Below are positions 3,365 through 60,457 of a DNA stretch of 64,000 bases, piece by piece. The stretch covers positions 62,001 through 126,000 of the IMG/VR virus record IMGVR_UViG_3300021520_000002, one strand, 5' to 3'. The notes beneath the pieces are model-generated. The model made no database searches, was not told the origin of the DNA, and saw only the letters and a program-made list of their open reading frames with translations. The translations under genes were made by a program, and so were the position numbers. How positions within the stretch are numbered: position 1 is the first letter of the stretch; every line of letters starts with the position of its first letter.

Positions 3365-4336
3365 GTGTCTGATTTAAATAGTATGATGGAGATGCTTGAA
3401 GTACCACAAGATATAATTGATGATATAATTGAAACTGAAAAAAGTGCTGAGATTCCTGAAAAACAATTTGAAATTATCATACCCGATATTACACGAGCAT
3501 ATTCTTTATTTGATATTGATAAATTTACAAAAGAATTACAGGAAAAATCTGCCGCTAAAAATCAAGCATATAGAGAATTATTTCAAAATATTAATGCTTA
3601 TGATTTGGCAAACAATTGTATTAGAGATATTGTTTATAAATTATTAAATACACCAGTTGAATCTTTTGCCGATAAATGGCTACCAGTATTATTAAGATCA
3701 ACTTTGGGAAATGCTATACATAATTTTATACAAGACAATTCTAATCAATTTACGGAACGAGAAGTATCAATAAAAATACCATCAAAAAGAGTTTCTGTTA
3801 GATTAGATAATTTAATTGGTCCAAATATTTTAGTCGAGATTAAAAGTTTACCTTATTCAGAATATGAAAAAATAGTTAAATCTTGTAAGCCAAGAATTGC
3901 TGATTTTTATCAAGCAGTAGCTTATAAATATTTCTTAGAAAATTTTCTTGAAGAAGCCAAAAATTCTGGAGAGAAGACAAGAACTCCACCTCCAGCTTTA
4001 AATAATTATGATATTCAACAAATTCAGTTTATTTATGTTGCTCATGATGTTGTAGCAAATGATGTTGAATCACTTGCTGAAATATTAGAGAGAATTAAAC
4101 AACTTAAAAGACTTCTTAATTCTAAATCTAATACATTCTTCTTCATGACAACATTAGCAATTGATGTTACAAATAATATTGCTGATCCATATATTAATTA
4201 TATTAAAAATAAATTAGAGCGTATTAATCATTATTTAGATAGCGGCAAGATTCCACCAAATGATGATGAATTTGTAGATACAGGTAAATGTTTCTTCTGT
4301 CTCTACAAGAAATTATGTAATCAGAATAAGAGATAA
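3365..4336 (+). CDS. Cas4-like PD-(D/E)XK exonuclease with 4Fe-4S cysteines (solo, no CRISPR)
   Basis: N-terminal C-x-R, GNAIH, RLD, EIKS, QAVAY and C-terminal CFFCLYKKLC. Confidence 0.8.
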   Translation: MSDLNSMMEMLEVPQDIIDDIIETEKSAEIPEKQFEIIIPDITRAYSLFDIDKFTKELQEKSAAKNQAYRELFQNINAYDLANNCIRDIVYKLLNTPVESFADKWLPVLLRSTLGNAIHNFIQDNSNQFTEREVSIKIPSKRVSVRLDNLIGPNILVEIKSLPYSEYEKIVKSCKPRIADFYQAVAYKYFLENFLEEAKNSGEKTRTPPPALNNYDIQQIQFIYVAHDVVANDVESLAEILERIKQLKRLLNSKSNTFFFMTTLAIDVTNNIADPYINYIKNKLERINHYLDSGKIPPNDDEFVDTGKCFFCLYKKLCNQNKR

Positions 4337-4339
4337 CAA

Positions 4340-4379
4340 ATAGAGAAGGGTTAATTCCCTTCTCTATATTCTTTTTTTT
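4340..4379 (+). terminator. intrinsic terminator
   Basis: ATAGAGAAGGG-ttaatt-CCCTTCTCTAT followed by poly-T. Confidence 0.75.
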
Positions 4380-4389
4380 GGAGATAATT

Positions 4390-4629
4390 ATGATTGTTAC
4401 TGAAGATGTTGCTAAAAAAGAAATGAAATGTTATAGAAATGTTAATGATAAAGGTGAATTTGGAACTTGTTTAGGATCAATTTGTATGGCATGGGAATGG
4501 TATCCTATAAATCAAATTAATAATGATTATGATTTTAGCGCTGGTCCAGTTGAAAATATTACTTTCACATCAAACAAAGGATATTGTGCTGCGGCTGGTA
4601 GACCATATGGATATAGAACAGGAGCTTAA
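4390..4629 (+). CDS. small Cys-containing phage protein (CxxSxCMAWxW...GYC)
   Basis: GGAG RBS before ATG 4390 (ORF track 4378); motif typical of small phage proteins. Confidence 0.6.
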   Translation: MIVTEDVAKKEMKCYRNVNDKGEFGTCLGSICMAWEWYPINQINNDYDFSAGPVENITFTSNKGYCAAAGRPYGYRTGA

Positions 4630-4631
4630 TT

Positions 4632-5084
4632 ATGATTAGTATAACTTATTTATTCGAATCAGAAAAGGAGATCTTGCCGATGAAAATTGGTATTATAGGA
4701 TATTCAGCAAAAAAATTTGATAAAAAATTAGCTGAAAAATTAATTATAGAAGGTTTAAATAAATTCAAAGCTAAAGAAGGAGATGAGTTAGTTTCTGGAT
4801 TAACTGATTTAGGAATACCAGGATTAGCTTATAGAATCGGTAAAAAAAGAAATATGAAACTTATCGGTATTGCTTGTAAAAAAGCACACGATGAAGATAG
4901 TGTTTGTTATCCTGTTGATAAAGAAATAATAGTTGGAGATAATTGGGGTGATGAATCAAAAACATTTTTAAAATATATAGATATGTTAATTAAAGTTGGT
5001 GGTGGAAAACAATCAATAGAAGAATATAATAGATTCAAAGGTCCTAAAATTGAGTTTGAATTGGCCGCTAAAGAGGATAATTAA
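4632..5084 (+). CDS. SLOG-superfamily (DprA/LOG/YspA-like) nucleotide-binding protein with N-terminal MISITYLFE leader
   Basis: MKIGIIGYS, LVSGLTDLGIPGLAY, LIGIAC, VGGGKQSIEE match the SLOG Rossmannoid pattern. Confidence 0.7.
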   Translation: MISITYLFESEKEILPMKIGIIGYSAKKFDKKLAEKLIIEGLNKFKAKEGDELVSGLTDLGIPGLAYRIGKKRNMKLIGIACKKAHDEDSVCYPVDKEIIVGDNWGDESKTFLKYIDMLIKVGGGKQSIEEYNRFKGPKIEFELAAKEDN

Positions 5085-5085
5085 A

Positions 5086-5247
5086 ATGGAACAACAAACA
5101 GCTCAAATTATACCAATAAATATTAAAAGAGGTTTTAATCCTATTTTTAGTTGTAGTTGTGGAAATGAGTCTTTTAATGAAGGAAATGGAACTGAAATTA
5201 TAATCATTTGTAAAAAATGTGGTAATACTTATGTTGAAGTAAAGTGA
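5086..5247 (+). CDS. small zinc-ribbon protein
   Basis: CSCG...CKKCG; ATG after GAGG (ORF track 5050). Confidence 0.55.
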   Translation: MEQQTAQIIPINIKRGFNPIFSCSCGNESFNEGNGTEIIIICKKCGNTYVEVK

Positions 5248-5254
5248 GGAGAAA

Positions 5255-5395
5255 ATGTTTGGAGATTTTATACTATATATAAAAGAATCTTGGAAAGAAT
5301 TTTGGTGTATTCATAATTATAAATTTGATAGATCGTTATGGTTAATACCAACACATTTAACTGTTAAGTGTGAAAAATGTGGGAGATTAAAATAA
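5255..5395 (+). CDS. 46-aa protein (CxHxY...CxKCG), not in ORF track
   Basis: GAGGAG RBS; MFGDFILYIKESWKEFWCIHNYKFDRSLWLIPTHLTVKCEKCGRLK*. Confidence 0.55.
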   Translation: MFGDFILYIKESWKEFWCIHNYKFDRSLWLIPTHLTVKCEKCGRLK

Positions 5396-5410
5396 GGGGA
5401 GTTTAAGAAT

Positions 5411-6007
5411 ATGTTATCAATAGGTTTTTTATTTGAAGATGAAGAAGATGATATTGATATGGAACAATATTTTGAAGATCGGACAAATTATCATATTGGT
5501 CTTGTAAATAGTTATTTAGATGAAATAATTGAATTACATGATCCACGTTTAGATCTTGCCGTTTTAGAACAAGAAAAAGAAATACATGATCAAAGTAAAT
5601 TTGAAGAACCAGAATATGAACCTTATGTTAAATTAACATGGAATTATTATTTAAAAGATCATGGTAAAAAAATTGATTCTTCACAAGATGAATTAAAGAA
5701 AATACAAGCGGCAACTTTTCATCATGTGAAGAATAATCAACATCATCCTGAATCTTGGGACGAGAATAGTACTATAGAAAGTATCAACAGTAAAGATAGA
5801 GATAAACCAGGGAAAATTGTTGATGCAACAAAAATGTCACTTAATTATATTGCAGCAATGGTAGCTGACTGGATGGCTATGTCAGAAGAGAAAGGAACAG
5901 ATCCATATAAGTGGTGTGAAATGAACATCAATAAAAGATGGAAGTTCACAGAAGAACAAGTTAAATTAATTTATGATCTATTGGATAAGATATGGAAGAA
6001 AAAATAG
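5411..6007 (+). CDS. HD-superfamily (DUF5662-like) phosphohydrolase with N-terminal MLSIGFLFE leader
   Basis: YH...HDQSKF...HHVKNNQHHPE...MVADWMAMS. Confidence 0.75.
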   Translation: MLSIGFLFEDEEDDIDMEQYFEDRTNYHIGLVNSYLDEIIELHDPRLDLAVLEQEKEIHDQSKFEEPEYEPYVKLTWNYYLKDHGKKIDSSQDELKKIQAATFHHVKNNQHHPESWDENSTIESINSKDRDKPGKIVDATKMSLNYIAAMVADWMAMSEEKGTDPYKWCEMNINKRWKFTEEQVKLIYDLLDKIWKKK

Positions 6008-6189
6008 ATGTTAAAACAGAACTAGAAAGATGTAAAAAAGATCCTATATATTTTATAGAGAATTATGTTGAATCGAAAGTTGTTCAATTATTAGATTTTA
6101 AAAAGACTAAAGATGAAAAAATTAAAAAGGAAACAGAAAAAAGAATATTAAAAGTATTATTAGAACATGCTGAAAAACTAGAATGGTGA
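5992..6189 (+). CDS. 65-aa protein resembling the N-terminal helix of the large terminase
   Basis: ELERCKKDPIYFIENYV versus EWFKCRENPFYFILNYV in the terminase at 15449. Confidence 0.6.
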   Translation: MEEKIDVKTELERCKKDPIYFIENYVESKVVQLLDFKKTKDEKIKKETEKRILKVLLEHAEKLEW

Positions 6190-6197
6190 GGTAAATC

Positions 6198-6773
6198 ATG
6201 ATATCAATTCTTGCCGAATATGAAAAAGAATTTTTTACTTACAATACAATATCTTCTGATATGTGGTATGAACTTATTAAAGAAGCTAAAAAAGAACAAA
6301 AAATTTTTTTTGATCTTGAAAATAATGAATCTAAAAAACAACAGAGAACAATAAAAATATTAGATAAAAAAGATACTCCACCAACAAATGAATATATTTT
6401 TAATTGTGAATTATTTACAGCTGGAGGAGATTGGGAAGTTCCTGTAAATTATTTTAGGTGTCAATTAATAAAAGGTTATTTAGAAGATAGAACAAGTTAT
6501 AGAAGACCATATTTTATTTATATACCTAAAAAAATAGAAGGAAATTATAATCTTGTTCCAAATTTAAAATCTGATGGAACTTGGCATGCTCCTGATAATT
6601 CTTATTATAAAAAAGGAATTGATCCAGAAGTGAATGATAAAGATTGTTGGAAAGCTTTAGATGGATATTTGAGAAAAATAGTAGAAGATTATATTGAAAA
6701 AAGAAAGTTAAAACAATTGGAAGGACAAACATCAATTGAAGGAAAAGAATCAAATGAGAATACAACTTCGTAA
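6198..6773 (+). CDS. hypothetical protein with MISILAE leader variant
   Basis: GAGGT RBS; 191-aa ORF. Confidence 0.7.
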   Translation: MISILAEYEKEFFTYNTISSDMWYELIKEAKKEQKIFFDLENNESKKQQRTIKILDKKDTPPTNEYIFNCELFTAGGDWEVPVNYFRCQLIKGYLEDRTSYRRPYFIYIPKKIEGNYNLVPNLKSDGTWHAPDNSYYKKGIDPEVNDKDCWKALDGYLRKIVEDYIEKRKLKQLEGQTSIEGKESNENTTS

Positions 6774-6785
6774 AAGAGGGTACTT

Positions 6786-8987
6786 ATGAATATAACGGGA
6801 CAAAGTCAATACTCAAAAATTGTGTCAGGGTTAAGACAACCAGGTAGAAAATTTGTGGGTCAAGATTTAAATTTAATTTTTGTATATCCAATTTTATTAC
6901 CCAACAAATTACCTGATCTACAAAATGTAGAAATGATAATTAGAAATTTTATATCTACAACATTTTTAAAAGAGATATTCATACAAAACACTATTAGTAT
7001 GATTTCTTTAGCTAATCAGATTCAACCTCTTTCTGACGAGATGGGAATAAGGATAGATCCAAATGCAACAGTTGCTCAAGTATTTCAAAACAATCAAACT
7101 GTTGGAAATATTCCAGTTGCTACAAGATCTGATACTTCTCCAAATTATTCTGTAAGTACACAGTATAGAGATCAAATACAGAGAAAGATTAATGAGAAGA
7201 CAGCTGTAATTCAGAAAGTAGTAAAAACAGATCCAGTGATGAGTAAATTAAATCCTTATGTTGAAATGATAACTATGGGAAATCTTATAGATGTACCAGT
7301 TATTGTAGGTACAAAAACATTTCAAGTAGACACACTTTCATTAATTCATATTTTATTAGCGGCTGTTGCAACAGATACAAAATTAGATAGTATTACTAAT
7401 TTAAATATTATTTGTGATGAACTTAATAAATTAGATGAAACAAAATATTGGAGATTATTAAATAAACTTGCCGCTGAAGATAAATCATTTCATTTATGGT
7501 CATGGATTAAATCTAGTGGAGTTAAAGTTGGAGAAAAAATATCTAACAAAGCAACATTACATATTCCTGAAACATCTAAATTTGTTAGAACTCAAGCAAA
7601 AAAAGTTGGAACTTTTGCATCTAGAATTCAAACTCAGCGAGGTAGTCTCGCTGGTGATATAATTAATCCTCTTAGAGGTAAAACTGGAGATTTAAGTGAT
7701 TTTGCTGAAAGTTCAGCATTTGAAATATTACGAGTTATGAAAACTAATTTAGATCAAACAAGATTATTTTTTAGATTTGTTTTAGATCAAAAATTTCTTA
7801 AATCACAAGTTGGAATTGAACCTTTTGATGAAAAAAGTATGACAAAAGGAATGACAGATAATCTTATTCCAGATTTGAAAAGATCAAGAATATTAACAAT
7901 TTCTGGTTTTCAAGATTTGTTAGCAGCATTTGGACTTTCTGCTTTAAGATCCAGTATAGTTGCAATTGAACCAGAACCAGATGTTGTTGGTTTAGATTTA
8001 CTTAATATAATTAATTCAGAAATTAATGAAAAACTTATTACTAGTCTTACTCAAAGTAATGAAGATGTATTTAAAACTATTTCAAATGGAATGAATTCAG
8101 CTACTATTGAGGCGACTAAACAACAAATTGATGTTATTAAGAATTTATGTAATTTTGATATCGGCAAAGAGATGGTTGATACTGGTAATAAACTAGCTGA
8201 TAAAGAATTACCAGTTAATTTTAACAATCAACAATATGTAGATTATGCTCATACTTTATCTCAACTTGGAGAATTATCTTCTGTAAAAAATAAACAGATT
8301 GAAAATTTGTTATCTCAATTTAGAGATATTGGAACAGAAGTTGTTGGGGTTTTAAGAAATGAAATAAAGACTGAAATTGCACAACGTTTAAAAACTATAT
8401 TTCAAACTTATAGTCAAAATTATACGGCAAATAATGTACCAAGAGTAGCAATTGTATTGACTACTCCATCAAATCAAGTAACAACAGATCAAGTTAATCG
8501 AGGAATTATACCAACAACACTTAATTATCTTACAGAATATTTTTATTTTTTATATTTAAAAGCTTTACAAGTAGCTATTTGTAAACTTATAACTAAAGTT
8601 GAAGTAACAGTTGATACAGCATCTAATGACATTACTGATTGGCCGAATTATACATTGGTTTTGCCGATAGAAATTGTTTCAGCTTTACATGCTGCGATGG
8701 TTTCTAAAGGATGGGAAAGTTTAACTACAGATAAAGAAGGTAATTATTTAACGAGTGAAGAACTTTCTAAAGCTGGAATAATTCATGTGACAGAAAATTA
8801 TGTTAAAGGTATAGTTAAGTTTGTAAGTATGAAATTAGGAGTACCAAATTTTGTTGTAGTCGATTCTAAAAAAGGTGATGTTTATTATAAGTTAATGCAT
8901 CAATCTGGAATCAATAAAACAAAATTATCTACGTTAGAATTATTTGTTAAAGAATCAATAAATAAACCAATTATCAATTATTATTAG
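6786..8987 (+). CDS. large hypothetical protein, probably virion-associated
   Basis: 733-aa ORF with GAGGG RBS in the + strand structural block. Confidence 0.75.
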   Translation: MNITGQSQYSKIVSGLRQPGRKFVGQDLNLIFVYPILLPNKLPDLQNVEMIIRNFISTTFLKEIFIQNTISMISLANQIQPLSDEMGIRIDPNATVAQVFQNNQTVGNIPVATRSDTSPNYSVSTQYRDQIQRKINEKTAVIQKVVKTDPVMSKLNPYVEMITMGNLIDVPVIVGTKTFQVDTLSLIHILLAAVATDTKLDSITNLNIICDELNKLDETKYWRLLNKLAAEDKSFHLWSWIKSSGVKVGEKISNKATLHIPETSKFVRTQAKKVGTFASRIQTQRGSLAGDIINPLRGKTGDLSDFAESSAFEILRVMKTNLDQTRLFFRFVLDQKFLKSQVGIEPFDEKSMTKGMTDNLIPDLKRSRILTISGFQDLLAAFGLSALRSSIVAIEPEPDVVGLDLLNIINSEINEKLITSLTQSNEDVFKTISNGMNSATIEATKQQIDVIKNLCNFDIGKEMVDTGNKLADKELPVNFNNQQYVDYAHTLSQLGELSSVKNKQIENLLSQFRDIGTEVVGVLRNEIKTEIAQRLKTIFQTYSQNYTANNVPRVAIVLTTPSNQVTTDQVNRGIIPTTLNYLTEYFYFLYLKALQVAICKLITKVEVTVDTASNDITDWPNYTLVLPIEIVSALHAAMVSKGWESLTTDKEGNYLTSEELSKAGIIHVTENYVKGIVKFVSMKLGVPNFVVVDSKKGDVYYKLMHQSGINKTKLSTLELFVKESINKPIINYY

Positions 8988-10989: not shown

Positions 10990-10994
10990 AATTA

Positions 10995-11030
10995 ATATCG
11001 GCAAGATCTATTACTAAATCTTGCCGATAT
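10995..11030. repeat. intergenic palindrome copy 1 (ATCGGCAAGAT...ATCTTGCCGAT)
   Basis: ATATCGGCAAGATCTATTACTAAATCTTGCCGATAT. Confidence 0.95.
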
Positions 11031-11045
11031 TTAACGAGGTAAAAA

Positions 11046-12110
11046 ATGGATAATTTAATAGACTACATAAATCAAGCCTTCTTTACGGAAGATACTGGAG
11101 TTATGAACTATTTCTATCAGCAACAATATCAAAATTATGCTCCAGATATTAATGGATATACCTTATGTTTTATGGTACCACCAGATTTAAGTGGTTATCG
11201 AGTAAAATTTAATGCTGGTTCTGGACTTTATACACAAGGAGATTCCAATTCTTATGTTGGAGAAGTATCAAATATGATGTCTTTTCTAGCTGTGGATTTT
11301 ACACCCCCACAAAGTCAAGTTAATACAGAACAAATATCATCTAGAACTGGAGCTATTCCTTATGCAACTGAAGTTTCAGAATCTGAACAATGTTCTGTTA
11401 CTTTTATAGATACTAATCAATTAGATATTTATCATTTTCATCATATATGGTTAGAATATATAAGAGAAGTTTTGGAAGGTGTAGTTGATCCAGCACCAGA
11501 ATATTTAAATTCAAATTCACAAATACAAGTAGATTATAGTTCACCAATAAATGATATATATGGTGCTATTGATTATGCAGCTTCTCTTTATATTGTAAAG
11601 TATAGACCAGATATGAAAACTATTACATATGTTGCTAAATGTATGGGAATTTTTCCTCAAAGTTTACCTAATAAAGAATTAGTTGGAACAAGAACTTCAA
11701 ATGAATTAACAACATTACCTTTTAATTATTTTTGCACAGCTTATAGAGAAGCAACACATCTTGATTCTGGAAATGGTGCTTGGATACTTGGAGAACTAAA
11801 TAGTTTTATTTTTAAGAAATATGCAACATCTTCAAGATCAATTCTTGGATTATTAACTGGTATGGGATTACAATCTTTATTTGAGACAGATGTTGGTGCA
11901 AGATTACTAAAATCTGTTGGACAAATTGGATCGGATGTTGTAAAATATGCAGATGTAGCATCAACAATATATAAATCAACTGAAAAATTTGGACAAATTT
12001 TTGGAGTTGGACAAACATTTGGTGAGTCAGTGGGTGGTGTTCCAAATATAGTTAGTTTTCCATCATTTAGTTCTTCATCTGATGATCCTGGGATGGGATG
12101 GGGTACATAA
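11046..12110 (+). CDS. tail-tube-like protein (paralog of 44323..45132) with Gly/Ser-rich C-terminal extension
   Basis: PDINGY...DFTPP...GIFPQSLP parallels PYISGY...GFTPH...GVFPTNLP in the tube gene. Confidence 0.65.
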   Translation: MDNLIDYINQAFFTEDTGVMNYFYQQQYQNYAPDINGYTLCFMVPPDLSGYRVKFNAGSGLYTQGDSNSYVGEVSNMMSFLAVDFTPPQSQVNTEQISSRTGAIPYATEVSESEQCSVTFIDTNQLDIYHFHHIWLEYIREVLEGVVDPAPEYLNSNSQIQVDYSSPINDIYGAIDYAASLYIVKYRPDMKTITYVAKCMGIFPQSLPNKELVGTRTSNELTTLPFNYFCTAYREATHLDSGNGAWILGELNSFIFKKYATSSRSILGLLTGMGLQSLFETDVGARLLKSVGQIGSDVVKYADVASTIYKSTEKFGQIFGVGQTFGESVGGVPNIVSFPSFSSSSDDPGMGWGT

Positions 12111-15421: not shown

Positions 15422-15448
15422 GTTCCAAAATTGGAGGCGAAAAATTTT

Positions 15449-17305
15449 ATGATACGGGCACCATTTGTTTTAACTAAATATGATGAAGAGTCACTGAATC
15501 TTCTTCAAGAAAGTAATGGAATAAGTATCGATGAATTTAAACAAAATGAGTGGTTTAAATGTCGAGAGAATCCATTCTATTTTATTTTGAATTATGTTTA
15601 CCTACCAGAAGTTGGTGGGAAATTAAAATACACAAAAGAATATTTACACCCAAAATTTAGAAGAATAATAAAATCAATATATAAAAATCATATGGCAATG
15701 TTAATGGCTTCAAGACAGTTAGGAAAAAGCTCAATTGCCGCTTGTCTACTTGCTTGGGCATTAATCTTTTTTCCAAATAATAGAGTTGTTATTCTAAACT
15801 ATAGAAAAATTGCCGCTCAAGAAAACTTAAAGAAAATAAAGTTCATAATACAAAATTTACCAAGTTGGATGAGGATTCCTTATAGATCTAAAAGTGAAAT
15901 AAAGGAATATGCTGAATTACAAAATGGTTCAAGAATAGACACATTTTATCCTTCATCAACAAGTTCTCCTTCTACATTAGCTCGTTCATTAACAGTTCCA
16001 ATCTTATATGTTGATGAGGTAGCTTTTATTTCTCATATGGAAGAAATTTATGGTTCAGCACAGCAGACACTTTCTAATGCTAGAGAACAAGCTATTAAAA
16101 ATAGTTATCCCTACTTTATTTTTATGACATCAACTCCCAACGGTGTTGAAGGTGATGGAAAATTCTTTTATGATTTTTGGATGAATGCTGTTGAATCTGA
16201 TGATCTTTTTGCTGAAGATCCAGAAACTGGAATGGAAGATTGGATACCAAATACTGATGATGTTCTTAATCAACCAGATAAAAATAGTTTTACAAGAGTT
16301 AAATATCATTGGTCTGAAAATCCAGATAAAACTATAGCATGGTATGAACAACAAAAGAAAGAACTCAACTTTGATCTTAGAAAGATTAATCAGGAATTAG
16401 ATATACTTTTTGTTGGTGGGACAAATTGTATTTTTACCGATGAAGTTTTACAAAAGTTAACATTTTTTCCTAGAGCAAATTATCTTGAACTTTCAAATCA
16501 AGTTCAGTTCGATATGTATGAGGAAATTGATACTCAAGATTATTATTTATTAGGGGTAGATACAGCGAGTTCTATTAAAGGAGCTTTTAATGCTCTTGAA
16601 TTATTTTCATATAGAGATTTTAAACAAGTTGGTGAAGCTAATGTTAGATTGGGGTCATTGACTAAATATGGTGAAACTGTTGATTCATTATTTAGACAAA
16701 TATATAAAACAACACAAAGAATAATTCTTTGTATAGAAAATAATTCTATCGGCAAAGCAGTTATTGAACATCTAATTTATCATATTAAAGATTTTAATTA
16801 TATGCCTTTTATATATAAAGAAAAAGATCCTGATATGGTAGAAAAACATGAATTTGGAATTTCAACAACTGGGAAATCTAAAGAATTAATGGTTTCTCTT
16901 TTTTATGATCATATTAATCAAAATCCACAATGTTTAAAATCCCAAAATTTAATTGCACAATTAGGTACAATTCAAAGATCGAATCGTGGAACAATTAAAG
17001 CTTCGGGTTTTAGTGATATGTTTATGTCTGGAAGTTTTTGTGCATATGTTCGTAATAGAACATTTCTAGATATTTTGCCGTTATTAGGTCAATCAAATAA
17101 ACAAGTACAAGATACATTTTTTAACTCGGTAAAAACTGCTGCTGAAATGATGAATGTTAAATTAATTATTAAAAATTCTTTACAACAAGAAACTGGTTTT
17201 ATGTCTGTTCAAGAAGATTCTTATAGAGATGAAGATGCTAAACACGAAAGTGATACAATATTAGATGAAGATTGGAGAATATATATACCGATCATGACAC
17301 CATAG
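15449..17305 (+). CDS. terL: terminase large subunit (T4 gp17-like)
   Basis: Walker A SRQLGKS, Walker B LYVDEVAF, coupling motif TSTPNG, nuclease LGVDTA, IENNSIG; ATG 15449 after GGAGG (ORF track 15431). Confidence 0.93.
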   Translation: MIRAPFVLTKYDEESLNLLQESNGISIDEFKQNEWFKCRENPFYFILNYVYLPEVGGKLKYTKEYLHPKFRRIIKSIYKNHMAMLMASRQLGKSSIAACLLAWALIFFPNNRVVILNYRKIAAQENLKKIKFIIQNLPSWMRIPYRSKSEIKEYAELQNGSRIDTFYPSSTSSPSTLARSLTVPILYVDEVAFISHMEEIYGSAQQTLSNAREQAIKNSYPYFIFMTSTPNGVEGDGKFFYDFWMNAVESDDLFAEDPETGMEDWIPNTDDVLNQPDKNSFTRVKYHWSENPDKTIAWYEQQKKELNFDLRKINQELDILFVGGTNCIFTDEVLQKLTFFPRANYLELSNQVQFDMYEEIDTQDYYLLGVDTASSIKGAFNALELFSYRDFKQVGEANVRLGSLTKYGETVDSLFRQIYKTTQRIILCIENNSIGKAVIEHLIYHIKDFNYMPFIYKEKDPDMVEKHEFGISTTGKSKELMVSLFYDHINQNPQCLKSQNLIAQLGTIQRSNRGTIKASGFSDMFMSGSFCAYVRNRTFLDILPLLGQSNKQVQDTFFNSVKTAAEMMNVKLIIKNSLQQETGFMSVQEDSYRDEDAKHESDTILDEDWRIYIPIMTP

Positions 17306-25941: not shown

Positions 25942-26178
25942 ATGATTTCAGTAGTAGATTTATTTGAAGTGGGTGGTCCAAATGATGATAGAACATCTTT
26001 TGCGAATGAACGAATTGCTACGTTACAAAGGGCTTTCAAATCTGGAAGAATGAAAGCTCCTGATTATCAAGCTCAATTAAAACAATTTATGCAAATGAAA
26101 CGTGGAGTTCCATCAAAACAGATGCCAGAAAGTGAAATTAAAACGGCAGGAACTTATTTAAATTCTTCACCACAATAG
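25942..26178 (+). CDS. small protein with MISVVDLFE leader
   Basis: GAGGTG RBS before ATG 25942 (ORF track 25930). Confidence 0.7.
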   Translation: MISVVDLFEVGGPNDDRTSFANERIATLQRAFKSGRMKAPDYQAQLKQFMQMKRGVPSKQMPESEIKTAGTYLNSSPQ

Positions 26179-26190
26179 AAAAGGAGGCGT

Positions 26191-27078
26191 ATGGTTTTTG
26201 AAACTAAAAAGAGTGGGTCAAATTCATTATTAAAAGCTTTTACATCAAGATATGTTGCTGAAGATTTTTTTGTAAATATAGCTCGAATTGTACTTTACCC
26301 ATCCGAGTTTGGTAATTTCATATCAGATAGGACAAATTCTGTAATTGATTATATGAGAGATTTTTTAAAGAGTTTGTCATTATTGTCTAATAATTTACAG
26401 TTAGCAAATAGTAAAGTTGTTAGAAGCCAAATCACTATTTTAACTTCTTTATTAACAATTCGAGAATCAAGTCCGATTTTATTAACTTACGAAAATGTTA
26501 ATCAACATTTGATGCCTGGACAAGATTTAATAGTTACTAAACTTATTCAAAAATGTGTTGATGAAAAGATTACAGATACTGATGAGTTTCGTAAAACTAC
26601 AGATGAAGTTATTAATACAATTTCATCTTATTATGAAATGATGTCTGCTGCAGATAGTATTACAATGGTTGGTAATCTTTATGATTTGATTAATGAAGGT
26701 AATCTTGTGCCGATGGAGACATTAAAAAGTTATAAAGATATTATTAATGTTGCTTATAATGATTTATCAAAATTACAATCATTAAGTAAAGCAGAATCAG
26801 CGGCAGATTATTTTGTTATTTCAGATGATAAATCTTGTGATGTATTATCTAAAACATTAGTTGATTATGTTGCAAAGGGTTTTTCAGTATTTAAAACTGG
26901 TTTTGATTTATTTGATAAACATATTGATGGAGTTGAGAGTTCATCAGTACACTTAATTGGTGCGCCTTCTAATCATGCAAAAAGTTTATTTACAATTAAT
27001 TTATCATATAGAATGATTAAAAACAATCTTGCTGATTTTGATCCACAAGATTGTATATTATTTGTAACTTTAGAGGAT
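26191..27078 (+). CDS. DnaB/gp41-like replicative helicase, exon 1
   Basis: KTGFDLFD, Walker A-like GAPSNHAKS, FVTLED; ends at the group I 5' splice site. Confidence 0.85.
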
Positions 27079-32487: not shown

Positions 32488-32976
32488 ATGCTTTTAGTAG
32501 AAGTTTTATTTGAACAAACTCCATCTCAAGTTCCTCCGGTACAAATTATTCAACATGTTACTCATACTCCAAAAGAACCTGATTCTAAATCGGTGGAGCC
32601 GAAACAACAGGAACAACCTGCCTCACAGGCACAAGCTGTTCCTCAGGAACAACAAATTCCACAGGGTCAGGAAACTGGAGACGAAGAAACAACTGGGGAA
32701 GAAATTCCAGAAGATGGACTTGGTGATGGTGGTCAGATGCAAGAGGAAGGTATTTCACCAGATCTTTTGCCGATTAAAAAATATTATTTGATTAGTAAAT
32801 TAAAAGAATTAAAGAATCAACTTATAGAATATAGTTTACAGAACGATGAACTTGATATCTTATTAAAATTTGCAGACAATCTATCATACAGTTCATTATT
32901 AAATGTTGGACTAATAATCACAGATGTTATTGGACAACAATTAGCGAGGTTAAAAGATGGCAAAAATACCAATTAG
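32488..32976 (+). CDS. acidic Gln/Glu-rich prohead core-like protein with MLLVEVLFE leader
   Basis: Between portal and protease; disordered Q/E/P-rich N-terminal half. Confidence 0.55.
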   Translation: MLLVEVLFEQTPSQVPPVQIIQHVTHTPKEPDSKSVEPKQQEQPASQAQAVPQEQQIPQGQETGDEETTGEEIPEDGLGDGGQMQEEGISPDLLPIKKYYLISKLKELKNQLIEYSLQNDELDILLKFADNLSYSSLLNVGLIITDVIGQQLARLKDGKNTN

Positions 32977-33721
32977 GAAATATAATTTTATATTTGAGAC
33001 TACCTCGATTAGTTCACGTGATGATATCAAGGTTTTAGAGGAAACAAAGTTACCTAATGGAAATGGAAAAATTTCAGCTTCTGTTAGGTTACAGGAAGCA
33101 GAAATGAAAAATAGTAATAGTCGATATTACTCAAATTCAATCTGTGAATCTATAGTGAATCAGTTATCTCCAAAAGCAAGTAGTCGTTCACTTTTAATGG
33201 AGATCGATCACCCTTTGTTTGTCTCTGACGATCAAAATGTTCTCAAAAGGAGAGCATCAATTGTTGAAATTAATAATTGTGGTAGTTTATTAAGAGAGAT
33301 AAGTTTTGCTGATAGAAAAGTGGGTGGTATATTTGAAACGCTTAGTGGTTTCAAAGGTCCAGATTTATATAATATAATTATGAAAGATAAGGTTGATGTA
33401 GGATTTTCGTTGAGAGCTCTTGGAGCAGTCGAACAACTTCAGGATGGAACAATAATGGTTAAAGATCCTATCAAACCAATTACTTATGATGTAGTTTCAA
33501 ACCCAAGTCACGCAACAGCAAAAGTTCTCGAATTCTTACCAGAAAACGTTACAGATTTTATGTCTGAACATAGTATGATTTATGAAGCAGCTGATATGGA
33601 GATGCTGGATCTAGATCATATAACTGTTGCAGACAGTACAATTTCATTAACAGAATTTTTCGACGACATTTATAAACAAAAATTTTCGGAAGTTATTACT
33701 AGAATAACTTTTAGAGTTTAA
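32957..33721 (+). CDS. prohead core protease (T4 gp21-like)
   Basis: NSNSRYY, EIDHP, VGFSLRALG, TYDVVSNPS. Confidence 0.9.
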   Translation: MAKIPIRKYNFIFETTSISSRDDIKVLEETKLPNGNGKISASVRLQEAEMKNSNSRYYSNSICESIVNQLSPKASSRSLLMEIDHPLFVSDDQNVLKRRASIVEINNCGSLLREISFADRKVGGIFETLSGFKGPDLYNIIMKDKVDVGFSLRALGAVEQLQDGTIMVKDPIKPITYDVVSNPSHATAKVLEFLPENVTDFMSEHSMIYEAADMEMLDLDHITVADSTISLTEFFDDIYKQKFSEVITRITFRV

Positions 33722-33749: not shown

Positions 33750-35357
33750 ATGTACGAACAAGCGATATTTGAAAATTATGAAATGTTCTTAAATGAGCAT
33801 AGTGATGAATTTTCTACTCCAAGTGGAGCATTGAAACTCATTACTGACAACGGTATGTTCAGATCTTATATGGAAGGTTTGACCAACGGCCTTGATTCAA
33901 ATCAGAGAGCTGTTGTTATGTCAGTAGCAAATCGTCAGAGGGAATATCTTTTAACAGAATCCGCAAACGTTCCAGGTTCTACACTGGCATTTGGTTGGAC
34001 TGTTCTTTCTTTCCCTATTCTTGTTGATATTTATGCTGAGCCAGTTGTGTCAGAGCTTTGCAATGTTTATCCAGTATCTTCACCAGTAGCTTCAATTCCT
34101 AGAATCAAAATTATGGCCTATATTAGGGGTTATGATGGAAACGTAACTCAGGTTCGTATGCCTACATTGAATCAGGCAGTAAGACCTGGTGCACTTAATC
34201 TTACAGTAACACCAGCCGTAAGTAATAACATTTTTACTATTGCTTCAGCTGCAGTTGCTCCTGCAACAGTAACATCAGATATGTACAGAATTAACAGGAG
34301 ATATACTCTTCTTACAGCTGTTCAGATTAATGAAACAACTGCTCTTGGTCCTGTTGTTGCACATAACGTATCAGTAACAATTAAACCAGACAACAGAAAT
34401 CAGTTTGTGGGTAGTTTTACATTTAATGATAATACTCCTGCTCCTGTTGGTCCTGTAGCAATTGTTGGTACTTTAAATGGTCATATTGACTATGATTCAG
34501 GCATATTCCAGTATCAGATTGTTTATGCAGTTGGTGCAACAACTTCTACTTTTGCAACAGTTTCAGCAACTATGACTATTCGTTTTATGTCTCTGACAAC
34601 TCAGAATGGTCGTATAAAAGTTAAGATTCAGACAGAAATGACTGATGTAAGCATCGATCAGAATGAAGATTTCTTGATTGAACTTCCTCCGGAAGATATT
34701 CAGGATTTCAGAGCAATCTTTAAGATTGACATTTTGAGAACACTTTCAGAAGCTATTAAGAGACAGATCATGTTAAACAAAGATCAGGATCTTGCATTCT
34801 TCTTAGCAGCTGCAGAAGGTGATATGGCATCTAATGGCGCAGCAGAAGCATTGAATCTTGCAAGTTTTGATGTAACTGGTGGACGTTTTGAGCCTAACAA
34901 AGTCATCGACGTTTTCAAAGCAGTAATTCCTAAGATTTCTATTCTTACTGGAATTATTCGTAGAAACTTCAACATGTATCCTTCTTATCTTGTCGCTGGT
35001 TTGAAGACTGCCGCATTACTTAGATCAGTTCAGACTTTCGCTCTCCAGATGCCAGGTATTGGAAATGGCGACGGAGCAGTAGGTTGGGCAGGGGATGTTG
35101 CACAGATGTTGAAGATGAAAGTTCTTGAGTCCAATGCAATCGCTGAAGGTAAGATTTATCTTTCAACGAAAGCTCCGAACAATGCTCTCGAGAAATCAGC
35201 AATTGTAGATTTGATTTATCAACCTCTTTACATTGTAACTGAGGTAACTGATGGTCAGACCAGGAACTATGTAAGATCCAGGACACTCATTGAAATTCCT
35301 AGAACAGATGGTCTTGGTGTTATTAATATTACTGGTCTTGGCACATATTTTACGTAA
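33750..35357 (+). CDS. major capsid protein
   Basis: 535 aa directly after the protease; probable maturation site YLLTE|SA near residue 70; C-terminal YQPLY...VRSRT; highly-expressed codon usage. Confidence 0.85.
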   Translation: MYEQAIFENYEMFLNEHSDEFSTPSGALKLITDNGMFRSYMEGLTNGLDSNQRAVVMSVANRQREYLLTESANVPGSTLAFGWTVLSFPILVDIYAEPVVSELCNVYPVSSPVASIPRIKIMAYIRGYDGNVTQVRMPTLNQAVRPGALNLTVTPAVSNNIFTIASAAVAPATVTSDMYRINRRYTLLTAVQINETTALGPVVAHNVSVTIKPDNRNQFVGSFTFNDNTPAPVGPVAIVGTLNGHIDYDSGIFQYQIVYAVGATTSTFATVSATMTIRFMSLTTQNGRIKVKIQTEMTDVSIDQNEDFLIELPPEDIQDFRAIFKIDILRTLSEAIKRQIMLNKDQDLAFFLAAAEGDMASNGAAEALNLASFDVTGGRFEPNKVIDVFKAVIPKISILTGIIRRNFNMYPSYLVAGLKTAALLRSVQTFALQMPGIGNGDGAVGWAGDVAQMLKMKVLESNAIAEGKIYLSTKAPNNALEKSAIVDLIYQPLYIVTEVTDGQTRNYVRSRTLIEIPRTDGLGVINITGLGTYFT

Positions 35358-35409: not shown

Positions 35410-35438
35410 TTTATTTTTGGAGATTGAATATGATAAGT
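35410..35438 (+). repeat. 29-bp direct repeat (5'UTR/RBS/start), copy A
   Basis: TTTATTTTTGGAGATTGAATATGATAAGT, identical at 36783..36811. Confidence 0.95.
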
Positions 35439-35648
35439 TTGTTTGAAATGTTTAAATTAAATGTTGATTCTAAACCACCATCAGAATGGAGTAATACAAA
35501 TACAAAAGTTTATGCTAAAAATCAACCAACATTTGAAGAATTAATAGCTCATCGCAATAATAAACAACCAATTAATAATTTTGATGATAGTTTAAGAGCT
35601 AAACAAGTATCATATCACTTCTTGAAAAAATTAAAATTAAATAAGTAA
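35430..35648 (+). CDS. small protein with MISLFE leader
   Basis: GGAG RBS before ATG 35430 (ORF track 35424). Confidence 0.65.
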   Translation: MISLFEMFKLNVDSKPPSEWSNTNTKVYAKNQPTFEELIAHRNNKQPINNFDDSLRAKQVSYHFLKKLKLNK

Positions 35649-36782: not shown

Positions 36783-36811
36783 TTTATTTTTGGAGATTGA
36801 ATATGATAAGT
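36783..36811 (+). repeat. 29-bp direct repeat (5'UTR/RBS/start), copy B
   Basis: Identical to 35410..35438. Confidence 0.95.
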
Positions 36812-37078
36812 GTTAGTATATTATTTGAAATTGGAAATAGTCCAGAGATGAGAGATAAATTATTCAAATTATCAAATTCATATCAGAAATCAATGAAATT
36901 ATTAAAAGAACCAGAAGATATTTCTGCAAAACAAAAATTAAGTGCTGCAGGAAATAGAGCACTTCAATTAGGAAGAAGTATTTCTTATAGATTACATGGG
37001 CAAAATCCAGAAACAACCATGAAAATGGCAGGAATATATAAATCAATGCTTCAACGTGCACAAGGTGAAAAAAAATAA
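36803..37078 (+). CDS. small basic protein with MISVSILFE leader
   Basis: GGAG RBS before ATG 36803 (ORF track 36797). Confidence 0.7.
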   Translation: MISVSILFEIGNSPEMRDKLFKLSNSYQKSMKLLKEPEDISAKQKLSAAGNRALQLGRSISYRLHGQNPETTMKMAGIYKSMLQRAQGEKK

Positions 37079-56424: not shown

Positions 56425-56512
56425 TGGTGGCGCTGACTGGACTTGAACCAGCATGGAGAAAATCTCCGAGAGATTTTAAATCTCTTGTGTAAACCAATTC
56501 CACCACAGCGCC
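56425..56512 (-). tRNA. tRNA-Leu(TAA)
   Basis: GGCGCTG...AGAGA-TTTAAAA-TCTCT...GTTCAAGTC...CAGCGCC A CCA; long variable arm. Confidence 0.95.
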
Positions 56513-56814: not shown

Positions 56815-56904
56815 TGGCGGAGAGCGTAGGATTTGAACCCACGAACCGCTTTCACGATTTCTAGTTTTCAAGACTAGCACCATCAGCCTCTCGGTCAGCT
56901 CTCC
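56815..56904 (-). tRNA. tRNA-Ser(TGA)
   Basis: GGAGAGC...CTAGT-CTTGAAA-ACTAG...GTTCAAATC...GCTCTCC G CCA; long variable arm. Confidence 0.95.
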
Positions 56905-60361: not shown

Positions 60362-60385
60362 TTTACCTCTTTTTGTTAGATTGAG

Positions 60386-60457
60386 TTGCAGGGGTCAGAC
60401 TTGAACTGACGACTTGAAGCTTATGAGGCTTCCACGCTACCTCTGCGTCACCCTGCA
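60386..60457 (-). tRNA. tRNA with CAT anticodon (elongator Met or Ile2), CCA not encoded
   Basis: TGCAGGG...GAAGC-CTCATAA-GCTTC...GTCAG-TTCAAGT-CTGAC-CCCTGCA-A. Confidence 0.88.

What the first reader, a model, noticed from the sequence alone, without database searches (positions are those of the whole stretch)
4632..6773. Cargo island of nucleotide-signal enzymes inside the virion block
Leader-tagged SLOG and HD-domain proteins cluster with small zinc ribbons. SLOG domains sense nucleotide signals (for example Thoeris ThsA) and HD domains hydrolyse nucleotides. Pre-packaged versions could sequester or destroy immune messengers at the moment of injection.
Basis: inference. Interest (0 to 1): 0.6.

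Follow-up and report, generated by a model that had tools for sequence, protein, structure and literature searches.

The report
Leader-tagged enzyme cargo in jumbo phage
In an uncultivated 285-kb freshwater jumbo phage, three neighbouring genes, two of them nucleotide-type enzyme folds (SLOG and HD), start with the same 9-residue tag found on dozens of its other small proteins and on its head-assembly proteins, which most likely loads them into the capsid for injection, though their targets are untested.

Summary
Window 4632-6773 encodes three proteins that begin with the leader M-[IL]-S-I-x-x-L-F-E or the variant MISILAEYE.

- **150 aa:** a stand-alone SLOG domain (AF2 pLDDT 88; LOG and MoCo-carrier matches, Z 13-15).
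- **198 aa:** Pfam DUF5662, shown here to be a divergent HD domain (pLDDT 93; best matches HD-GYP and PgpH, Z about 9; invariant H, HD, H, HH, D).
- **191 aa:** fold unknown.

Two untagged Zn-ribbon-like ORFs and a 65-aa TerL-N-like ORF lie between them.

The strict leader occurs 18 times in the genome, always directly after a start Met, and 0 times in shuffles. Looser "MIS" forms bring the total to about 35 ORFs. Ser3 uses both codon boxes, so the peptide is what is selected. Close homologues carry the leader and distant ones lack it. The scaffold-like protein (MLLVEVLFE) and the major capsid protein (MYEQAIFE), which flank an S80 Glu-specific prohead protease, share the motif. In related phages a leader-tagged Tad6-family Thoeris inhibitor sits in the same slot.

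My best reading is a T4-CTS-like capsid-targeting, protease-cleaved propeptide that loads a variable counter-defence cargo. Packaging is inferred, and the immune-messenger targets are speculative. I rate it a new variant of a known kind.

The parts
4340..4367 (+). Terminator-like hairpin plus T-run that separates the upstream Cas4-like nuclease gene (3365-4336) from the island
   Evidence: 11-bp stem, 5 GC pairs, T-rich tail; sequence
4378..4629 (+). 83-aa untagged Cys-containing ORF (TTG start; ATG alternative at 4390), no family
4632..5084 (+). 150-aa stand-alone SLOG-domain protein. Leader MISITYLFE = 4632-4658, then a disordered linker; the fold starts at residue 18. An internal ATG at 4680 is preceded by AAGGAG, so an untagged isoform is possible.
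5086..5247 (+). 53-aa untagged Zn-ribbon-like ORF (CSC...CKKC). A homologous 43-aa ORF follows the SLOG gene in relative L005.
5255..5395 (+). 46-aa untagged ORF, CxH...CxxC, phrog_4188 (unknown function)
5411..6007 (+). 198-aa DUF5662 protein, a divergent HD-domain metal-dependent phosphohydrolase fold. Leader MLSIGFLFE = 5411-5437, followed by an acidic linker. Invariant H28, H59-D60, H105, H111-H112, D153.
5992..6189 (+). 65-aa untagged ORF resembling the N-terminal segment of large terminase. A 178-nt metatranscriptome contig (100% identical) covers 5998-6175.
6198..6773 (+). 191-aa tagged protein (leader MISILAEYE = 6198-6224) of unknown fold. Conserved motifs FDLEN...AGGDWE...YFRCQ...IP...GN. 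Absent, together with the 65-aa ORF, from a sludge relative and from L005.
6786..8987 (+). 733-aa conserved downstream anchor gene (717-718 aa in relatives), unknown function. It begins a tight co-oriented run of genes that ends at a hairpin at 10994-11031, just before the tail tube gene.
32488..32976 (+). 162-aa acidic, Q-rich scaffold-like protein between the putative portal gene and the protease. Its N-terminus MLLVEVLFE has the leader form.
32957..33721 (+). Prohead maturation protease, Peptidase_S80 (phiKZ gp175 type): the enzyme proposed to cut after the leader's Glu
33750..35357 (+). Major capsid protein; N-terminus MYEQAIFE carries the same I-F-E ending
25942..26178 (+). Further leader-tagged small ORF in the window (78 aa, MISVVDLFE)
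35430..35648 (+). Further tagged small ORF just after the MCP gene (72 aa, MISLFEMF)
36803..37078 (+). Further leader-tagged small ORF in the head module (91 aa, MISVSILFE)

Best explanation
**What it is.** The window comes from a 285.6-kb, 29% GC freshwater jumbo myovirus. Its 9-residue N-terminal leader (consensus M-I-S-[IV]-x-x-L-F-E) is most likely a capsid-targeting propeptide of the T4 CTS type.

**How I think it works.**
1. The leader directs the protein into the assembling prohead core.
2. The phage's Glu-specific S80 prohead protease cuts it off after the Glu.
3. The mature protein stays in the head and is ejected with the DNA.

**The finding within this system.** The genes at 4632-6773 are one variable, accessory stretch of the system. 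They load a stand-alone SLOG domain, a DUF5662-type HD phosphohydrolase and a 191-aa protein of unknown fold.

**Likely role.** The cargo most likely acts in the first minutes of infection as counter-defence. The HD enzyme has a seven-residue H/HD/H/HH/D pattern and its best structural matches are cyclic-dinucleotide phosphodiesterases, so I think it hydrolyses a nucleotide-derived molecule. The SLOG domain would bind or cleave a ribonucleotide-type ligand.

**Shown versus inferred.**
- Shown: the folds, the leader's statistics and modularity, its presence on head proteins, and a tagged Tad6 homologue in the same slot in relatives.
- Inferred: targeting, cleavage, ejection.
- Speculative: immune messengers as the substrates.

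**My odds.** Leader as prohead-targeting or cleaved propeptide, about 0.65. Cargo role in counter-defence, about 0.45. SLOG or HD acting specifically on immune nucleotide messengers, about 0.25-0.3.
For: **Leader statistics.**
- 18 of 18 strict motifs sit directly after a start Met, against 0 in 30 shuffles.
- The looser M-x(4-7)-[LI]FE form occurs 38 times, against 1-7 in shuffles.
- About 35 MIS-type ORFs lie among about 100 ORFs at genome 15-69 kb.

**Peptide-level selection.** Ser3 is coded by TCN 11 times and AGY 7 times.

**Modularity.**
- SLOG: the 7 closest of 44 homologues carry the leader.
- DUF5662: 40 of the best 54 homologues carry it, and none of the next 66.
- 191-aa family: 11 of 33 carry it, and other homologues have different N-termini such as MKL....

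**The leader is not part of the fold.** In both AF2 models the leader has low confidence (mean pLDDT of residues 1-10 is 46-49), and the first ordered element starts at residue 17-18.

**Link to the head.**
- The scaffold-like protein starts MLLVEVLFE and the MCP starts MYEQAIFE. Both flank a Peptidase_S80 protease and both N-termini are conserved in a relative.
- Proteases of this kind and T4 gp21 all cut after Glu. T4's 10-20-residue CTS propeptides target Alt and the internal proteins into proheads (PMC5694885).
- Tagged proteins are small (39-277 aa). Replication, tail and terminase proteins lack the tag.

**Link to counter-defence.**
- Leader-tagged Tad6-family proteins lie next to DUF5662 in L007 and L008. 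Tad6 binds ThsB and inhibits Thoeris (PMC13728456).
- The slot's content varies between relatives: an Rv2179c-like exonuclease in L005, and loss of the 65- and 191-aa genes in L005 and in a sludge relative. This resembles the variable internal-protein loci of T-even phages.
- T4 injected proteins Ip2 and Ip3 are anti-restriction factors (PMC12373910).

**Other tagged enzymes.** A LigD 3'-phosphoesterase and a canonical HD in this genome. In relatives, an M48 peptidase with a related IFE-type N-terminus (MEFEELIFE) and a probable J-domain protein, called from an HPD motif only.

**Folds.** (SLOG; HD).
Against: - There are no proteomic, cleavage or binding data. The phage is uncultivated.
- Characterised S80 proteases prefer a small residue at P3 (A/S/G-x-E, PMC5694885). 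Here P3 is Leu, as in T4.
- The complex prediction of protease with SLOG gave no answer, which is neither support nor evidence against.
- Most DUF5662 and SLOG homologues elsewhere are untagged, and SLOG homologues also occur as lone genes in cyanobacterial and other bacterial chromosomes. The activity may therefore be generic nucleotide metabolism.
- The structural Z of about 9 for an all-helical domain is only moderate. The HD call rests on the consistency of the hits plus the motif.
- HD-GYP's GYP motif is absent.
- This genome has no Tad6.
- No PADLOC or anti-defence family hits the window's own proteins.
- Immune messengers are usually made after the phage is sensed, so pre-loading is not obviously needed.
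Confidence: 0.5

Rival explanations
1. The tag does load the proteins into the head, but the SLOG and HD enzymes do early housekeeping or host take-over rather than attack immune messengers. Examples would be trimming nucleotide pools or alarmones, or processing DNA or RNA ends alongside the tagged LigD 3'-phosphoesterase.
For: - SLOG is closest to the LOG and PpnN nucleotide N-glycosidases and to MoCo carriers.
- HD matches also include the YfbR, DatZ and OxsA nucleotidases.
- Untagged homologues are widespread in phages, and SLOG homologues are also found in bacteria.
- A tagged LigD_N phosphoesterase and a canonical HD point to nucleic-acid or nucleotide chemistry in general.
Against: - A tagged Tad6-family Thoeris inhibitor occupies the same slot in relatives.
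- Gene content in the slot turns over between close relatives, which is typical of arms-race loci.
- The best HD matches are cyclic-dinucleotide phosphodiesterases.
Confidence: 0.22
2. The leader is not a packaging signal. It marks proteins for something else: cleavage-dependent activation, transient assembly-factor roles in the prohead followed by degradation, a degradation or localisation signal, or an optimised translation start.
For: - T4 core proteins that carry cleavage sites (gp22, gp67, gp68) are destroyed rather than delivered (PMC5694885).
- Many tagged ORFs are very small (39-80 aa) with no recognisable domain.
- The leader DNA is AT-rich.
- SLOG has an internal ATG with its own AAGGAG.
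Against: - Synonymous codon variation, including both Ser codon boxes, argues against a nucleic-acid element.
- Folded enzymes (SLOG, HD, LigD-PE, Tad6-like, M48) are unlikely scaffold debris.
- The motif is strictly N-terminal and shared with the scaffold-like protein and the MCP.
- Its length and its ending in a hydrophobic residue, any residue, then Glu match T4 CTS behaviour.
Confidence: 0.18
3. The shared N-termini are a trivial by-product of recent gene duplication or of mis-called starts, and the cluster is a set of ordinary unrelated accessory genes.
For: - Some tagged small ORFs lie in tandem and could be paralogues.
- Gene callers sometimes chose the internal Met (P0009).
Against: - The tagged proteins have unrelated folds.
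- Similarity stops after residue 9.
- The leader is conserved in homologues from many independent metagenomes, including one with a GTG start.
- The motif never occurs away from a start codon.
Confidence: 0.02

Closest known systems
T4 capsid targeting sequence (CTS) on the internal proteins IPI-III and Alt, cut by the gp21 prohead protease
   Same: - A short (about 10-residue), strictly N-terminal tag shared by otherwise unrelated small proteins.
- It ends in hydrophobic-x-Glu.
- The phage encodes a Glu-specific prohead protease.
- Head proteins carry the same site.
- The cargo genes sit in variable loci, and the known cargo (IPI*, Ip2, Ip3) is injected anti-restriction protein (PMC5694885, PMC12373910).
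   Different: - The sequence differs (MIS[IV]xxLFE against T4's MKTYQEFIAE, the latter from my own knowledge).
- The protease is S80 (phiKZ type), not S77.
- About 35 tagged ORFs, against a handful in T4.
- The cargo includes enzyme folds (SLOG, HD, LigD-PE).
- Nothing has been shown experimentally.
Ejection and inner-body proteins of phiKZ-like giant phages (phiKZ, 201phi2-1, SPN3US), processed by the S80 protease
   Same: - Giant myovirus with an S80 protease.
- Many head-internal proteins are expected.
- Weak sheath similarity to AR9, PBS1 and phiR1-37.
   Different: - Their propeptides are mostly long (over 100 residues) and not conserved as one tag.
- Their cleavage motif is A/S/G-x-E (PMC5694885).
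- Here the tag is a uniform 9-mer with Leu at P3.
- The MCP has no detectable match in 50,697 phage records.
Tad6 and other Thoeris inhibitors (Tad1-8). From my own knowledge, also the phage enzymes that destroy immune nucleotides (Acb1, Apyc1, AcrIII-1).
   Same: - A Tad6-family protein with the same leader occupies the slot between or next to SLOG and DUF5662 in relatives L007 and L008.
- The idea of a phage phosphodiesterase removing a signal has precedents.
   Different: - This genome has no Tad6.
- SLOG and DUF5662 are unrelated in fold to Tad1/2, Acb1 (2H), Apyc1 (MBL) and AcrIII-1. I recall these folds from memory and did not test them.
- None of the known ones is reported, as far as I know, to be virion-packaged.
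SLOG superfamily: LOG phosphoribohydrolases, MoCo carrier proteins, LDcluster4 (PF18306), and the ThsA and TRPM ligand-binding domains
   Same: - Rossmann-like fold with Gly-rich loops (Z 12-15).
- 'GGGKQSxxE' lies where LOG has PGGxGTxxE. The LOG motif is from my own knowledge.
   Different: - No Pfam LOG (PF03641) hit.
- The segment before the helix reads W-G-D-E-S. I recall an Arg-bearing motif in LOG at this point, but that alignment is by eye and untested.
- It is a stand-alone 133-residue domain without an effector.
- No ThsA chain appears among the top 50 matches shown.
HD-domain phosphohydrolases, especially the bimetal cyclic-dinucleotide phosphodiesterases HD-GYP and PgpH
   Same: - All-helical HD fold (Z 9.2-7).
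- Ordered invariant H...HD...H...HH...D.
   Different: - No GYP motif.
- The spacing between the fourth His and the HH pair is much shorter.
- Sequence similarity to Pfam HD is undetectable.
- DUF5662 is mentioned in no paper in the searched library.

Membership tests
SLOG superfamily | Rossmann-like alpha/beta fold shared with LOG, DprA, YpsA, MoCo carrier and TRPM N-terminal domains | tested here: met
   AF2 pLDDT 88. Foldseek E 7e-6 to 1e-3 to LOG, MCP, TRPM and YpsA. VIA Z 14.9-10 to the same proteins plus DprA, ShosA and PpnN.
SLOG superfamily | Conserved glycine-rich ligand-binding loops after the first strands and before the last helix | tested here: met
   Invariant G20, G23, G56, G61, G102, G106, G123, G125 plus T58, E108, S109, Q127, E131 in 35 sequences.
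LOG (cytokinin-type phosphoribohydrolase, Pfam PF03641) | PGGxGTxxE motif with a catalytic Glu, plus a catalytic Arg motif; hit to the family model | tested here: not met
   No PF03641 hit. The motif reads GGGKQSIEE, so the Glu is kept but the G-T is not. By eye, W-G-D-E-S stands where I recall the Arg motif. The LOG motifs are from my own knowledge.
ThsA-type SLOG sensor (Thoeris) | SLOG fused to an effector (SIR2 or TM) and activated by gcADPR | tested here: not met
   The protein is a stand-alone 150-aa leader plus SLOG with no other domain. Ligand binding is not testable here.
HD superfamily | All-helical fold with the metal-binding H...HD...D signature | tested here: met
   Invariant H28, H59-D60, D153, plus H105 and H111-H112. 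Nearly all of the top 25 wide structural matches are HD-domain proteins. The next-nearest Atlas clusters are PF01966.
HD-GYP cyclic-di-GMP phosphodiesterases | HHExxDGxGYP motif | tested here: not met
   The sequence has HHPESW and no GYP. The resemblance is in fold only (Z 9.2).
Pfam DUF5662 (PF18907) | Score above the gathering threshold over the full model | tested here: met
   85.1 bits against a cut-off of 27, model positions 1-154 of 156.
T4-type capsid targeting sequence / prohead-protease propeptide | Short N-terminal tag shared by unrelated proteins, ending in hydrophobic-x-Glu | tested here: met
T4-type capsid targeting sequence / prohead-protease propeptide | Genome encodes a Glu-specific prohead protease, and head proteins carry the same site | tested here: met
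   Peptidase_S80 at 26.8 bits against 23.4. Scaffold-like protein MLLVEVLFE and MCP MYEQAIFE.
T4-type capsid targeting sequence / prohead-protease propeptide | The tag is cleaved, and the mature protein is present in virions and ejected | not testable with these tools
   The phage is uncultivated. The complex prediction gave no answer.
Tad6 (PF25188) Thoeris inhibitor | Hit above the Pfam threshold | tested here: not met
   There is no match anywhere in this genome. The feature is met only by leader-tagged genes in the equivalent slot of relatives L007 and L008 (43.4 bits against 27 for L007; L008 from the precomputed hit).
Zinc ribbon | Two pairs of Zn ligands (CxxC/CxC/CxH) about 15-25 residues apart in a small beta-rich protein | tested here: inconclusive
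   The spacing is present in the 53-aa and 46-aa ORFs. The only Pfam ribbon hits are sub-threshold, on the 43-aa homologue in L005. No structure was predicted.

The most novel reading that the evidence does not exclude
A widespread clade of uncultivated freshwater jumbo phages uses one 9-residue 'zip code' (MIS[IV]xxLFE). It loads dozens of swappable proteins into the capsid and delivers them with the DNA as a pre-made arsenal against signalling-based immunity. That arsenal includes a Tad6-type Thoeris inhibitor, a new HD phosphodiesterase family (DUF5662), a minimal SLOG protein and a LigD-type phosphoesterase. In this reading DUF5662 hydrolyses a cyclic nucleotide messenger. The SLOG acts as a LOG-like glycosidase or a sponge for ADP-ribose-derived signals such as gcADPR.
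Probability: 0.2. Interest if true: 0.8.

Novelty: new variant of a known kind. Interest (0 to 1): 0.6.

Why it matters
If the leader is a capsid-targeting tag, a simple sequence rule would list the whole injected proteome of a large group of uncultivated phages straight from metagenomes. That would give a catalogue of first-minute host-takeover and counter-defence factors. It would also assign a fold and a testable activity to DUF5662, a mostly viral family that no paper in the searched library mentions, and to a viral branch of the SLOG superfamily. It would extend the T4 CTS principle to S80-protease giant phages, whose known propeptides are long and dissimilar. A portable 9-residue tag could also be useful for loading foreign proteins into phage heads. 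If the enzymes do destroy or bind immune nucleotides, they would be, as far as I know, the first virion-delivered inhibitors of signalling immunity.

Tried and rejected
- **Complex prediction, S80 protease with SLOG:** 'no answer' (ipSAE 0.00). This is neither support nor evidence against.
- **Foldseek of the DUF5662 model against PDB:** nothing significant. Only the wide VIA search showed the HD fold.
- **Profile searches of the three families against PDB sequences:** nothing usable.
- **hhalign of DUF5662 against the phage's own canonical HD protein:** no alignment.
- **191-aa protein:** no hit in Pfam, PHROGs, PADLOC, the Atlas or the PDB profile search, and no match in 50,697 phage records.
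- **Cultured relatives:**
  - The MCP has no match in the phage collection.
  - DUF5662 has one weak hit.
  - SLOG hits only Bacillus phage G gp345 and Sinorhizobium phage Phosso, from residue 18 onward.
- **A conserved SLOG plus Zn-ribbon gene pair, rejected.** My automated scan found a Cys-rich ORF downstream in 2 of 43 genomic loci, one of which looks spurious, and one further case was seen by eye. Bacterial neighbourhoods of SLOG homologues are not conserved and gave no hint of the ligand.
- **Tad6 in this genome:** absent.
- **Promoter scan:** no more sites than in shuffles.
- It carries no annotation and would not have changed the verdict.


Full report
**Setting.** The window is bases 62,001-126,000 of a single 285,572-bp contig with 29% GC, an IMG/VR virus record estimated 95% complete. 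It is a jumbo myovirus. The window encodes:
- a large terminase (15431-17305), a tail sheath (42025-44253) and a tail tube (11046-12110);
- a major capsid protein (33750-35357);
- a Peptidase_S80 prohead protease (32957-33721);
- a UvsX-like recombinase and a split DnaB-like helicase.

The capsid protein has no match in 50,697 deposited phage genomes. The sheath is only 24% identical to those of AR9, PBS1 and phiR1-37. Identical DNA occurs in lake and freshwater metagenomes from several studies, so this is an uncultivated freshwater phage lineage.

**What is at 4632-6773.** After a terminator-like hairpin (4340-4367), ten co-oriented, nearly abutting ORFs run to a second hairpin at 10994-11031, just before the tail tube gene. 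The finding covers six of them.

| Coordinates | Length | Feature |
|---|---|---|
| 4632-5084 | 150 aa | starts MISITYLFE |
| 5086-5247 | 53 aa | CxC...CxxC |
| 5255-5395 | 46 aa | CxH...CxxC, phrog_4188 |
| 5411-6007 | 198 aa | starts MLSIGFLFE |
| 5992-6189 | 65 aa | resembles the N-terminal segment of large terminase |
| 6198-6773 | 191 aa | starts MISILAEYE |

Upstream lie a UvsX-like recombinase and a Cas4-like nuclease. Downstream lie conserved 733-, 243- and 412-aa genes of unknown function. The cluster therefore sits at the upstream edge of the structural block, and probably in one transcription unit with it, rather than inside it.

**The 150-aa protein is a SLOG domain.**
- The direct Pfam hit is weak (LSDAT_prok, E 0.02), but homologues carry PF18171 and PF18306.
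- An AlphaFold model built on 35 homologues has pLDDT 88.
- Foldseek matches LOG, MoCo-carrier proteins, TRPM N-terminal domains and YpsA at E 7e-6 to 1e-3.
- VIA gives Z 14.9 to a MoCo-binding protein and 13.7 to LOG, with Z 10-12.6 to YpsA, ShosA, DprA, PpnN and TRPM2.
- The nearest Atlas clusters are 'SLOG cluster 4', and they are mostly viral.
- Invariant residues are the glycine loops plus T58, E108, S109, Q127 and E131. 'GGGKQSxxE' lies where LOG has its PGGxGTxxE motif, but there is no LOG Pfam hit and W-G-D-E-S lies where I recall LOG's Arg motif, judged by eye.
- It is a stand-alone domain, so it can only be a binder or an enzyme, not a sensor coupled to an effector.

**The 198-aa protein is a divergent HD domain.**
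- It is a full-length member of Pfam DUF5662 (E 5e-24), a family that no paper in the searched library mentions.
- Sequence profiles find no solved structure, and Foldseek finds nothing.
- The model has pLDDT 92.6. A wide structural search lists almost only HD-domain proteins in its top 25:
  - HD-GYP DvhD (Z 9.2), PgpH (8.9), Bd1817 and PA4781;
  - the cGAMP phosphodiesterase V-cGAP3;
  - the nucleotidases YfbR, DatZ and OxsA.
- H28, H59-D60, H105, H111-H112 and D153 are invariant in 38 sequences. From my own knowledge, this H/HD/H/HH/D order is the pattern of bimetal HD phosphodiesterases. I could not check that these residues cluster in three dimensions.
- DUF5662 clusters in the Atlas are 75-89% viral.

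**The 191-aa protein remains unknown.** It has 33 metagenomic homologues with strongly conserved motifs but no family, fold or PDB match.

**The leader is the most striking feature.**
- *Chance.* The motif [ILV]S[ILV]xx[LIM][FM]E occurs 18 times in the six-frame translation of the genome, each time directly after a start Met, and never in 30 shuffles. The looser M-x(4-7)-[LI]FE form occurs 38 times against 1-7 in shuffles.
- *Extent.* With variants such as MISILAE, MISIIFE and MISIMEIFD, about 35 ORFs carry the tag. Most lie at genome 15-69 kb, and the finding is the downstream end of that array.
- *Peptide, not DNA.* Ser3 is coded by TCN 11 times and AGY 7 times, so selection acts on the peptide.
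- *Modular.* The tag is present on the closest homologues of all three families and absent from distant ones, which begin directly at the fold or carry other short N-termini.
- *Not part of the fold.* In both models the leader has low confidence (mean pLDDT of residues 1-10 is 46-49), and the first ordered element starts at residue 17-18.

**Link to head assembly.**
- The 162-aa acidic, Q-rich scaffold-like protein, encoded between the putative portal gene and the protease, begins MLLVEVLFE.
- The capsid protein begins MYEQAIFE, and the protease has IFE at residues 12-14.
- The first two N-termini are conserved in a relative.
- The protease belongs to the S80 family. Its characterised members, like T4 gp21, cut after Glu. 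T4 uses 10-20-residue N-terminal capsid targeting sequences to load Alt and the internal proteins into proheads (PMC5694885).
- Tagged proteins here are small (39-277 aa). Replication, tail and terminase proteins are untagged.

I therefore read the leader as a T4-CTS-like targeting and cleavage propeptide. This is an inference. One point against it is that known S80 enzymes prefer A/S/G at P3, whereas Leu stands there here.

**Link to counter-defence.** Related contigs keep the same order of nuclease gene, island, then the 717-733-aa gene, but the island's content varies.

| Locus | Source contig | Gene order in the island |
|---|---|---|
| L005/L006 | 49.8 and 87.8 kb | SLOG, Zn ribbon, two small ORFs, Rv2179c-like exonuclease, DUF5662. 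No 191-aa gene. |
| L009 | 13 kb | SLOG, 70 aa, DUF5662, 187 aa |
| L007 | 4.9 kb | SLOG, Tad6-family protein (MISLLYLFE; 43.4 bits against a cut-off of 27), 69 aa, DUF5662, 187 aa |
| L008 | 47.5 kb | Tad6-family protein (MVSIAYLFE), 46 aa, DUF5662, 189 aa, and further on an M48 peptidase starting MEFEELIFE |

A sludge relative lacks exactly 5998-6758, the stretch that holds the 65- and 191-aa genes. Tad6 is a ThsB-binding inhibitor of type I Thoeris (PMC13728456). T4's injected Ip2 and Ip3 are anti-restriction proteins (PMC12373910). Other tagged proteins in this genome are a LigD-type 3'-phosphoesterase, a canonical HD protein, a DUF5661 protein and glycine-zipper proteins. A relative tags a probable J-domain protein, called from an HPD motif only.

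- In favour: the folds, the tag, the plausible delivery route and the neighbouring Thoeris inhibitor all fit 'pre-packaged counter-defence'.
- Against, or open:
  - There is no evidence of packaging, cleavage, ligand or activity.
  - Most homologues of both enzymes are untagged.
  - SLOG homologues stand alone in cyanobacterial and other chromosomes without informative neighbours.
  - This genome lacks Tad6.
  - Messenger-based defences usually fire after sensing, so early delivery is not obviously required.

My odds are:

| Claim | Probability |
|---|---|
| Leader is a prohead-targeting, cleaved propeptide | about 0.65 |
| Cargo serves counter-defence | about 0.45 |
| SLOG or HD act on immune nucleotide messengers | about 0.25-0.3 |

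**Expression.** One 178-nt contig from a lake metatranscriptome matches 5998-6175 exactly. This is weak evidence, because DNA carry-over is possible.

**Verdict.** The system is a new variant of a known kind: CTS-tagged injected proteins, here in an uncultivated S80-protease jumbo-phage clade, with a different and much more widely used tag and with enzyme cargo. Interest 0.6.

Noticed in passing
window 26191-29226: A DnaB-like helicase appears split into two ORFs: 26191-27081 matches profile positions 332-390 and 28240-29226 matches 417-583. An endonuclease VII/HNH-type ORF (27349-28152) lies between them. This is possibly a homing-endonuclease or intron insertion.
   Followed up: no
L010:3797-6722 (relative, contig IMGVR_UViG_3300009502_001749): In the relative, the major capsid gene is interrupted after about 325 codons by a 302-aa ORF that looks like an HNH-type homing endonuclease (judged by eye from its sequence; no family search was run) and resumes at about 6135. 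The putative portal gene also seems to be interrupted by similar ORFs. The window's own MCP gene (33750-35357) is intact.
   Followed up: no
window 5992-6189 and L005:9808-10008: A 65-66-aa ORF resembles the N-terminal segment of large terminase (phrog_5989, E 1e-6), although a full TerL is encoded at 15431-17305. Its position differs between relatives. It is the only part of the island seen in a metatranscriptome contig.
   Followed up: partly
genome 17576-18013 (L001:7576-8013), 188565-189251 minus strand (L004:8565-9251), 189269-189559 minus strand: Further leader-tagged enzymes lie outside the window. One is a LigD 3'-phosphoesterase domain protein (E 2e-19). Another is a canonical HD protein (PF01966), which has a small neighbour with the variant N-terminus MINIGYLFE.
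   Followed up: partly
genome 30042-39513 (outside the window, L002): Five large paralogous ORFs (295-886 aa) all begin MN(V/L)PPYG(D/N)..K. They are probably a family of tail-fibre or other structural proteins.
   Followed up: no
window 4665-4682: Inside the SLOG gene, an AAGGAG lies 9 nt upstream of the in-frame ATG for Met17. This is exactly where untagged homologues start, so a tagged and an untagged isoform might both be made. The internal Met is common among relatives but not universal.
   Followed up: partly
L005:1574-2107, L008:11250-12125, L009:10836-11717: Relatives tag a probable J-domain protein (HPD motif seen by eye, no family hit; MISVSYLFE, GTG start). Their M48 metallopeptidase begins MEFEELIFE, the MCP-like variant of the tag.
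   Followed up: no
window 56425-56512, 56815-56904, 60385-60457 (minus strand): Three tRNA genes (Leu-TAA, Ser-TGA, Met-CAT) lie in the minus-strand half of the window. GC skew switches sign near 44-46 kb, where gene orientation flips.
   Followed up: no
homologue lists: Many homologues are filed under Patescibacteria (CPR) or DPANN archaeal MAGs, for example Dojkabacteria, Paceibacterota and Nanoarchaeia. These low-GC contigs are probably phage contigs binned by mistake, though a CPR host cannot be excluded.
   Followed up: no
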